DNA of 64,000 nucleotides from Prasinococcaceae sp. CCMP 1430 (taxonomy: Eukaryota > Plantae > Prasinodermophyta), in contig RQSC01000029.1 of the NCBI GenBank assembly GCA_013416795.1, forward strand, positions 158,491 through 222,490, read 5' to 3'. The notes beneath the pieces were generated by a model. That model was not told the origin of the DNA. It made no database searches and worked only from the letters and a program-made list of their open reading frames with translations. Of the stretch, positions 46,645-47,544 are shown in pieces. The number at the start of each line of letters is the position of its first letter. Positions within the stretch are counted from its first letter, which is position 1. A program made the translations under genes and the position numbers.

Positions 46645-47544
46645 TCAGGCGATCTTGCCGTTGAGGATGTCGGCGACAATGCGCCGCCTGAAGAAAGGCA
46701 TGTCGGCCTGCGAGAAGGTCATCTTTGCGCCCCGCGCCTGGTACTCGGCCATCTTCAGCATGAACACGCCGCAGTCGACGCCATTCAACTGCGAGGGCAC
46801 AGCCTCGCCGCCGAGCACGCCGGCGAGCTGGTGGAGGGTCAGCCTGTCCAGCTCCCCGAGCGGAAACTTGGCCTGATGTTCATCGGACAGCCAGCGTTTG
46901 AGGTTCGTGAGCGCATTCAGAACGTCCGAGTGGTGCATGGAGTCGTAGAATGTCAGGCGCTTGGCGCGCAGGTCGATGACGCAGACGGTCCAGTGCACCT
47001 CCTGGTGCAAGGGGACGATGATCTTGTCCACGTCAAACACGCTCTCAGCAGGCAGCTTTCGCGCTTTCAGCCTCGCGGGCAATGTCCACCTCTTGACTCC
47101 CTTGTAATCGTACTTCCCAACGTAGCTCCCGCTTTCCACCGAATACAGCTTCTTGTAGAACATCGTGGTCCAGACCCACACCTTCGGCAGCCGACCACCC
47201 GCTTCTGCGTCCCTGACCTGTCTGTCCTTGATCATCCGAAGATAGAAATTGATCACCTCATCGTTCAGCCACTCTCCGCCCCGCATGCTGGCGAAGTCGT
47301 GCCTGGTGCACGGAGCGCCCTCGTCCTTGTGGAAAGCCAGCTGCTCGTTGCGCGGCTGCATGGTTTCGTCCAGAGCATTGAGCACCTTCTCCTCTTCCTC
47401 GGGGGTCAGCGGCGTGAGGGCCGGGTCCTCCGCGCCCTCAACCTCCGCCACATCTTCCTCGACGACCCCGTGCCCGCTTCCTTGGCCGCTCGGCGTCCGA
47501 TCACTCTCTGTCCGCGTGAGGGCCGGGTCCTCCGCGCCCTCAAC
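46645..47544 (-). CDS. ULP1: ULP1/SENP SUMO protease, copy 1 (5' part missing or on another exon; contains the complemented patch)
   Basis: WLNDEVINFY, TMFY, KIIVPLH..VHW, FYDSM, QLNGVDCGVF; an in-frame stop or AG acceptor lies immediately upstream. Confidence 0.8.
   Translation of the reverse strand, partial: VEGAEDPALTRTESDRTPSGQGSGHGVVEEDVAEVEGAEDPALTPLTPEEEEKVLNALDETMQPRNEQLAFHKDEGAPCTRHDFASMRGGEWLNDEVINFYLRMIKDRQVRDAEAGGRLPKVWVWTTMFYKKLYSVESGSYVGKYDYKGVKRWTLPARLKARKLPAESVFDVDKIIVPLHQEVHWTVCVIDLRAKRLTFYDSMHHSDVLNALTNLKRWLSDEHQAKFPLGELDRLTLHQLAGVLGGEAVPSQLNGVDCGVFMLKMAEYQARGAKMTFSQADMPFFRRRIVADILNGKIA

What the first reader, a model, noticed from the sequence alone, without database searches (positions are those of the whole stretch)
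46812..46866. 55 nt that are the exact complement WITHOUT reversal of the paralogous segment
ULP1 copy 1 (46607-47237) aligns to copy 2 (48871-49501) at offset 2264. At 46812-46866 every base is the Watson-Crick complement of 49076-49130 read in the same direction: cgagcacgccggcgagctgg...gagcggaaa versus gctcgtgcggccgctcgacc...ctcgccttt, 55/55 checked by eye. The flanks are identical on both sides apart from one base at 46811. An ordinary inversion or template switch gives a reverse complement, not this. Length and frame are preserved: copy 2 encodes the native-looking KGEPLDLSDWEVVERPHEH and copy 1 encodes FPLGELDRLTLHQLAGVLG. The likeliest cause is a software error (a patch complemented but not reversed), which would cast doubt on this scaffold. 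If it is in the raw reads, it implies a sequence-mirroring process with no known mechanism.
Basis: seen in the sequence. Interest (0 to 1): 0.78.

Follow-up and report, generated by a model that had tools for sequence, protein, structure and literature searches.

The report
Assembly artefact: complemented 55-mer patch
The 55 bases really are written as the un-reversed complement of their paralogue in this assembly, but independent DNA and RNA data of the same alga show the normal sequence there, so it is a software error at an assembly-graph junction, not biology.

Summary
Window 46812-46866 is the base-by-base complement, without reversal, of 49076-49130 (55/55). It sits inside two about 99% identical copies of the 3' part of a Ulp1/SENP (C48) protease gene.

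The patch is not in the organism.
- Two independent DNA runs hold an 835-nt contig with copy 1's own SNPs and the native 55-mer.
- Two RNA-type runs hold the copy-2 form.
- Eight of ten independent marine metagenome contigs hold the native 55-mer; none holds the complemented one.
- Homologues conserve the motif that only the native version encodes.

The block's position points to the cause. Coming from copy 1's unique flank, the first run of at least 55 bases shared by the two true copies is 46812-46881. The block is exactly the first 55-mer of that run. Just to its right, the assembled copy 1 carries copy-2 letters at four sites. Copy 2's contig also stops at a paralogue fork.

My best reading is that the entry k-mer (k=55) of a de Bruijn graph repeat was written with half of a reverse-complement operation.

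Other readers of this scan noted the same thing before on other DNA of this genome, mostly as exactly 55-nt blocks. I did not check those notes.

It is not a real feature. It matters only as a quality warning for this assembly.

The parts
46812..46866 (.). The 55-nt block written as the un-reversed complement of the true sequence. It is the first 55-mer shared by the two true paralogues when coming from copy 1's unique left flank.
   Evidence: 55/55 complement. Independent contigs read the native 55-mer here. It is the first 55-mer of the first shared run of at least 55 nt.
46811..46811 (.). A real paralogue SNP (copy 1 C, copy 2 T) directly abutting the block. It is the fork that defines the block's left edge.
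   Evidence: The X1/X2 DNA contig keeps C here, while L001 and copy 2 have T.
46607..47513 (-). Copy 1: a 5'-truncated duplicate (about 907 nt) of the 3' part of the Ulp1/SENP (peptidase C48) gene. The ORF as assembled is 46645-47451.
   Evidence: Pfam PF02902, E 1.2e-30. blastn to L001 covers 46607-47513. Its own SNPs and its left junction are present in independent DNA contigs (records 3 and 6).
46882..46929 (.). Four sites (46882, 46898, 46928, 46929) where the assembled copy 1 carries copy-2 letters (A, T, G, A) but independent DNA of copy 1 reads G, C, T, C. This looks like a collapsed bubble or path switch just right of the block.
   Evidence: table 3; reconstruction.
48871..49501 (-). 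Copy 2: the 3' part of the intact Ulp1/SENP gene, cut by the N gap. It is identical to the wild-population contig L001 at every paralogue SNP.
   Evidence: Pfam PF02902, E 1.1e-28.
49076..49130 (-). The native version of the 55-mer. It encodes KGEPLDLSDWEVVERPHE, which matches the family's conserved K.G.ELD.S.W segment.
   Evidence: Alignment A1. It is present in 8 of 10 independent contigs.
49502..49896 (.). An N gap that begins exactly at the end of a 190-nt run shared by the paralogues, at the fork equivalent to 47238. The sequence after the gap is not collinear with independent contigs.
48164..48724 (+). Biotin carboxyl carrier (Biotin_lipoyl) gene lying between the two copies and convergent with copy 2. 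Its protein was the handle used to fetch independent contigs.

Best explanation
The block is an in-silico error made when this short-read scaffold assembly was written out; it is not in the alga's DNA. The genome really holds two about 98% identical copies of the 3' part of a Ulp1/SENP protease gene. In a de Bruijn graph with k=55, the path coming from copy 1's unique flank first meets the copy-2 path at the 55-mer 46812-46866, which starts right after the SNP at 46811. That junction k-mer was emitted with only half of a reverse-complement operation: either complemented when it should have been left alone, or reversed but not complemented when the other strand was wanted. The following bases were written normally. 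Shown here: the patch is absent from independent data, its edges coincide with forks, and a path switch lies next to it. Inferred: k=55, the vertex-printing bug, and which program did it (unknown).
For: (1): in two independent DNA runs (X1, X2) one 835-nt contig spans 46607-47441. It keeps copy 1's own letters at 46706, 46730, 46735, 46780, 46811 and 47047. Its listed differences (29 substitutions and 8 gap letters) rebuild exactly the native 55-mer. (2): two RNA-type runs (X15, X16) hold a 766-nt contig with copy-2 letters at the SNPs listed (46706, 46730, 46735, 46780). Its differences inside the patch were only partly listed, and those shown fit the native sequence. (3): 8 of 10 independent ENA/Logan contigs of the locus contain the native 55-mer. 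None contains the complemented 55-mer, any 20-mer of it, or either junction 30-mer. (4): the native version encodes the conserved K.G.ELD.S.W segment of C48 proteases, and the Pfam score drops from 101 to 89.2 bits with the patch. (5): identical runs between the true copies from the left are 53, 45, 23, 44 and 30 nt, then 70 nt (46812-46881). The block is the first 55-mer of the first run of at least 55 nt. (6): just right of the block the assembled copy 1 carries copy-2 letters at four sites. (7): copy 2's contig ends at another paralogue fork. (8): other readers noted at least eight further complement-only blocks on other pieces of this genome, most exactly 55 nt (unchecked leads). (9): the scaffold has other mis-joins.
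Against: The assembler, its k and its raw reads are unknown to me, so k=55 is inferred only from the block length. Other readers' notes also list a 39-nt and a 73-nt block, which a single k does not explain directly. The runs were laid as Logan contigs, which show presence and not absence, so a rare variant would be dropped. The X1/X2 contig is itself a bubble-popped consensus, so assigning the four right-hand differences to copy 1 rather than to a third copy is the simplest reading but is not proven. I know of no published bug that does this.
Confidence: 0.7

Rival explanations
1. The block is another in-silico cause, not a graph-vertex bug. Candidates are a gap-filling or polishing patch written with complement only, a colour-space (SOLiD) decoding slip, or a hand-made or deliberate edit of the sequence. 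In colour space a colour error of type 3 complements every base up to the next such error.
For: Absence from independent data fits any software cause. In colour space the two copies differ by only three colours around the patch.
Against: The colour-space identity is a mathematical necessity of any complement patch, so it is no independent evidence. Nothing indicates that SOLiD data were used. Colour errors, or arbitrary patches or edits, would not be expected to recur at exactly 55 nt. They would also not be expected to start exactly at the first shared 55-mer after a paralogue SNP with a path switch beside it.
Confidence: 0.27
2. The patch is real DNA in the culture or sample used for this assembly. 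It would have been made by some parallel-strand or systematic base-exchange copying process, comparable to the claimed 'swinger' A<->T + C<->G exchange or parallel-primed synthesis.
For: The exchange rule fits perfectly and the reading frame stays open. Such processes have been claimed in the literature (PMC4942731, PMC4304224).
Against: Four runs, which appear to be of the same strain (CCMP1413, inferred from PMC11884799 and the run years), and 8 environmental contigs show only the native sequence. An open frame over 18 codons in about 67% GC DNA is unremarkable. The fixed 55-nt length and the fork position are properties of an assembler, not of a polymerase. No established mechanism exists.
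Confidence: 0.02
3. The match is a chance resemblance, or an ordinary inversion of a mirror-symmetric sequence.
For: None.
Against: 55/55 in register has a probability near 4^-55. The native 55-mer is not a mirror repeat, because the reverse-only search of the window finds no such match at these coordinates. The block is not the reverse complement of its paralogue, and no inverted repeat is found in 43840-49501.
Confidence: 0

Closest known systems
De Bruijn graph repeat-junction and bubble-collapse misassemblies in short-read assemblies
   Same: The breakpoints lie exactly at forks created by paralogue SNPs. One bubble is collapsed to the other copy's arm. A contig ends at a fork. The affected unit has the length of a commonly used k (55).
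   Different: Ordinary junction errors give chimeras, collapses or gaps, not a k-mer written as its un-reversed complement. I found no description of such a bug.
Colour-space (SOLiD) decoding errors
   Same: One wrong colour of type 3 complements every following base until a second such error, which gives in-place complement tracts with intact flanks (my own knowledge; colour view).
   Different: There is no sign of SOLiD data. The length would vary rather than recur at 55. The edge would not be tied to the first shared 55-mer.
'Swinger' sequences (systematic nucleotide exchange A<->T + C<->G; Seligmann, PMC4942731, PMC7027195)
   Same: The same formal transformation: complement without inversion, next to regular sequence.
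   Different: Those are claimed for RNAs and ESTs and remain controversial. Here the exchanged tract is absent from independent DNA and RNA data of the organism.
Ulp1/SENP SUMO proteases (Pfam PF02902, peptidase C48)
   Same: Both copies match the catalytic domain. His, Asp and Cys are at invariant alignment columns (H153, D170, C227).
   Different: Copy 1 lacks the N-terminal ~158 residues of the 447-aa gene. As assembled, it carries 19 nonsense-derived residues in place of the conserved K.G.ELD.S.W segment.

Membership tests
Assembly-graph (k-mer vertex) artefact | Absent from independent sequence data of the same organism | tested here: met
   the DNA contigs with copy-1 SNPs carry the native 55-mer, and the RNA-type contigs are copy-2 type at the listed SNPs; 0 of 10 independent contigs carry the patch (contigs, not raw reads).
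Assembly-graph (k-mer vertex) artefact | Edges coincide with graph forks between repeat copies | tested here: met
   the block is the first 55-mer of the first shared run of at least 55 nt, directly after SNP 46811. Copy 2's contig ends at the fork equivalent to 47238.
Assembly-graph (k-mer vertex) artefact | Block length equals the assembler's k | not testable with these tools
   The assembler and its k are unknown. The published P. coloniale assembly is PacBio/NextDenovo in 22 chromosomes (PMC7455551), which does not look like this N-containing scaffold.
Assembly-graph (k-mer vertex) artefact | Recurs with the same length elsewhere in the assembly | not tested
   Other readers' notes list at least seven 55-nt blocks plus one of 39 and one of 73 nt on other pieces. 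I could not read those pieces.
Inversion / replication template switch | The derived tract is the reverse complement of the source | tested here: not met
   the tract is complement only, in register; no inverted repeat.
SOLiD colour-space decoding error | The tract is identical in colour space and bounded by colour errors that combine to type 3 | tested here: met
   This is true of any complement patch, so it is not diagnostic.
SOLiD colour-space decoding error | Colour-space reads were used for the assembly | not testable with these tools
   The assembly's provenance is unknown.
Swinger (A<->T + C<->G exchange) nucleic acid | The exchanged tract is present in raw nucleic-acid data from the organism | tested here: not met
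Peptidase C48 (Ulp1/SENP) | Pfam PF02902 match above the gathering score, with His/Asp/Cys at the conserved columns | tested here: met
   (107, 101 and 89 bits against a cut-off of 20.7); invariant H153, D170, C227.
Peptidase C48 (Ulp1/SENP) | Conserved K.G.ELD.S.W segment before the Q.NG.DCG motif | tested here: not met
   it is met by copy 2, P0001 and distant homologues, but not by copy 1 as assembled. It is met again in the true copy 1 rebuilt from X1/X2.

The most novel reading that the evidence does not exclude
The complemented 55-mer exists as real DNA in the particular culture that was sequenced for this assembly. It would have been produced by an unknown parallel-strand copying event at paralogue junctions, and it escaped detection here because only contigs of other cultures and samples were available.
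Probability: 0.01. Interest if true: 0.95.

Novelty: not a real feature. Interest (0 to 1): 0.07.

Why it matters
There is no biology here. The value is practical. This assembly appears to contain a systematic class of errors: junction k-mers written as un-reversed complements, beside collapsed paralogue bubbles and mis-joined scaffolds. These errors keep length and often keep the reading frame, so they produce plausible-looking but false peptides and false stop codons. Ordinary alignment-based quality control, which looks for reverse complements, does not see them. Every complement-without-reversal note on this genome should be read as the same artefact until raw reads say otherwise. Gene models and paralogue comparisons from this assembly need checking against an independent assembly.

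Tried and rejected
- **Colour-space idea.** I first favoured SOLiD decoding errors because complement equals a colour-3 shift. I dropped it as the best explanation because that identity holds for any complement patch, the recurring exact length of 55 nt is not expected, and the k=55 fork fit is better.
- **JGI metagenome scans.** Scans for the complemented and then the native 55-mer both returned 0. The collection does not hold this locus, so the result is uninformative.
- **Literature.** A phrase search for complement-only assembly errors found only the parallel-DNA and swinger literature, and no bug report. A search linking Prasinoderma to short-read assemblers found nothing.
- **Published genome.** The published genome paper describes a PacBio assembly, so it does not explain this scaffold's provenance.
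- **Overlaps at gaps.** I looked for unmerged overlaps around the single-N and long-N gaps to estimate k and found none.
- **Protein search.** It found no 100% match to the patched protein, so the assembly's own annotation could not be traced.
- **Apparent joint 47500 to 47412.** This joint in the read table is only the window's own 33-nt direct repeat (47412-47444 and 47514-47546) seen past the end of the laid stretch.

Full report
**1. The observation**

- At offset 2264 the window holds two near-identical segments, 46607-47237 and 48871-49501.
- Inside them every one of the 55 bases 46812-46866 is the Watson-Crick complement of 49076-49130 read in the same direction.
- 46811 (C) against 49075 (T) is neither identical nor complementary.
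- A k-mer search of the whole window with complement-only and reverse-only queries finds no other such match above 17 nt and 21 nt respectively. Those short matches are GC-rich simple sequence.
- Chance is excluded at about 4^-55.
Six more SNPs separate the copies within the repeat: 46660, 46706, 46730, 46735, 46780 and 47047.

**2. What the segments are**

- Both encode the catalytic domain of a Ulp1/SENP cysteine protease (Pfam PF02902; E 1.2e-30 and 1.1e-28).
- The closest database protein, P0001, has 447 aa and comes from a Tara metagenome scaffold. It is 91% identical to the assembled copy 1 and carries copy 2's version of the patch.
- Distant homologues conserve a K.G.ELD.S.W segment at exactly this place. 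Copy 2's KKGEPLDLSDWEVV fits it; copy 1's FPLGELDRLTLHQLAGVLG does not.
- Over the same 196 residues the Pfam score is 101 bits with the native patch and 89.2 bits with the complemented one. Copy 2 is therefore the native form.
- The scaffold behind P0001 (L001/L002) shows the gene order Biotin_lipoyl gene, then a convergent Ulp1 gene, then DDAH. That corresponds to copy 2.
- Copy 1 (46607-47513) is a 5'-truncated duplicate on the other side of the Biotin_lipoyl gene.

**3. Is the patch in independent data?**

- Twenty public runs hold this stretch or part of it. Other agents of this scan name the genome Prasinoderma coloniale; I did not test that.
- Fourteen DNA runs of 2024 fit the mutation-accumulation lines of strain CCMP1413 described in PMC11884799. 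The 2015 run fits the MMETSP transcriptome of that strain. Both assignments are inferences.
- I laid two DNA runs (X1, X2) and two RNA-type runs (X15, X16) on 46400-47500 at 80% likeness, so that a native-type contig could align through the patch.
- In X1 and X2 one 835-nt contig spans 46607-47441.
  - It keeps copy 1's own letters at 46706, 46730, 46735, 46780, 46811 and 47047.
  - All its differences are 29 substitutions and 8 gap letters.
  - Applying them to the window rebuilds the native 55-mer exactly, plus four further changes: 46882 G, 46898 C, 46928 T and 46929 C.
- In X15 and X16 a 766-nt contig has copy-2 letters at every listed SNP. Its differences inside the patch were only partly listed, and those shown fit the native sequence.
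- Of ten independent ENA/Logan contigs fetched through the neighbouring gene, eight hold the native 55-mer. None holds the complemented 55-mer, any 20-mer of it, or either junction.
- The patch is therefore absent wherever I could look.
- The caveat is that these are contigs, which prove presence and not absence. The reads of this particular assembly were not available.

**4. Why the patch is where it is**

- I took the true copy 1 from X1/X2 and the true copy 2 from L001 and listed the runs of identity between them.
- From copy 1's unique left flank the runs are 53, 45, 23, 44 and 30 nt, then 70 nt (46812-46881), then 29, 117 and 190 nt.
- The first stretch in which the two loci share at least 55 consecutive bases starts at 46812, right after the real SNP at 46811. 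The complemented block is exactly its first 55-mer.
- The 15 bases that follow (46867-46881) are written normally.
- This is the layout of a de Bruijn graph edge, a start-vertex k-mer plus appended bases, at the point where a unique path enters a repeat, with k=55.
- Two further observations fit a graph origin.
  - Just right of the block the assembled copy 1 carries copy-2 letters at the four sites named above, which looks like a collapsed bubble.
  - The assembled copy 2 stops (N gap from 49502) exactly at the end of the 190-nt shared run, that is at the next fork.
- An in-place complement results either from complementing a piece that should be left alone, or from reversing without complementing a piece that should be reverse-complemented. 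Either is a one-line slip.
- Which program did it is unknown. The published genome of this alga is a PacBio/NextDenovo assembly in 22 chromosomes (PMC7455551), which does not look like this N-containing scaffold.

**5. Context from the scan**

- Other first-stage readers noted complement-without-reversal blocks on other pieces of the same genome. At least seven are exactly 55 nt, one is 39 nt and one is 73 nt.
- These notes are unchecked and I could not read those pieces. The recurrence of 55 moved me from a colour-space idea to the k-mer reading.
- The 39-nt and 73-nt cases are not explained by a single k.

**6. Rivals**

- **Other software causes** (gap-fill patch, colour-space decoding, deliberate edit) also explain the absence from reads. 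They do not explain the fork position and the fixed length. I give them 0.27 together.
- **Real DNA** made by a parallel-strand or 'swinger'-type process (PMC4942731, PMC4304224) is contradicted by the independent DNA and RNA. I give it 0.02.
- **Chance, or inversion of a mirror repeat**, is excluded.

**7. Verdict**

- It is an assembly artefact, most likely a mis-written k=55 junction vertex.
- It has no biological interest, but it is a useful warning about this assembly.

Noticed in passing
window 46882, 46898, 46928, 46929: The assembled copy 1 carries copy-2 letters (A, T, G, A) at these four sites. Independent DNA contigs that have copy-1 SNPs elsewhere read G, C, T, C. The assembled copy 1 is therefore a mosaic of the two paralogues (a collapsed bubble).
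   Followed up: yes
window 49502-49896 and onward: The sequence after this N gap has no match to the independent contigs. They continue with 750 nt more of the Ulp1 gene and then a DDAH gene. The 395-N gap is therefore mis-sized or the scaffold is mis-joined here.
   Followed up: partly
window 32828 and 39046: Single-N joints connect rDNA pieces out of order. At 39046 a mid-LSU rRNA fragment is followed, after one N, by the start of the SSU rRNA. At 32828 non-rDNA is joined to a mid-LSU fragment.
   Followed up: partly
window 47412-47444 and 47514-47546: An exact 33-nt direct repeat, 102 nt apart, brackets the end of copy 1's homology to the Ulp1 gene (47513). Contigs of all four runs follow the window through it, so it appears real. 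It may mark the duplication breakpoint.
   Followed up: partly
window 43840-49501: The best DNA runs, apparently of the same strain, hold only 0.78-0.83 of the sampled 31-mers of this stretch. About a sixth of the words are therefore not confirmed by independent data.
   Followed up: no
window 46607-47513 (copy 1): Only the copy-2 form was seen in the two RNA-type runs. Many of the roughly 19 differences between the copies change amino acids. Copy 1 may be a silent, decaying partial duplicate, although contigs drop minor variants.
   Followed up: partly
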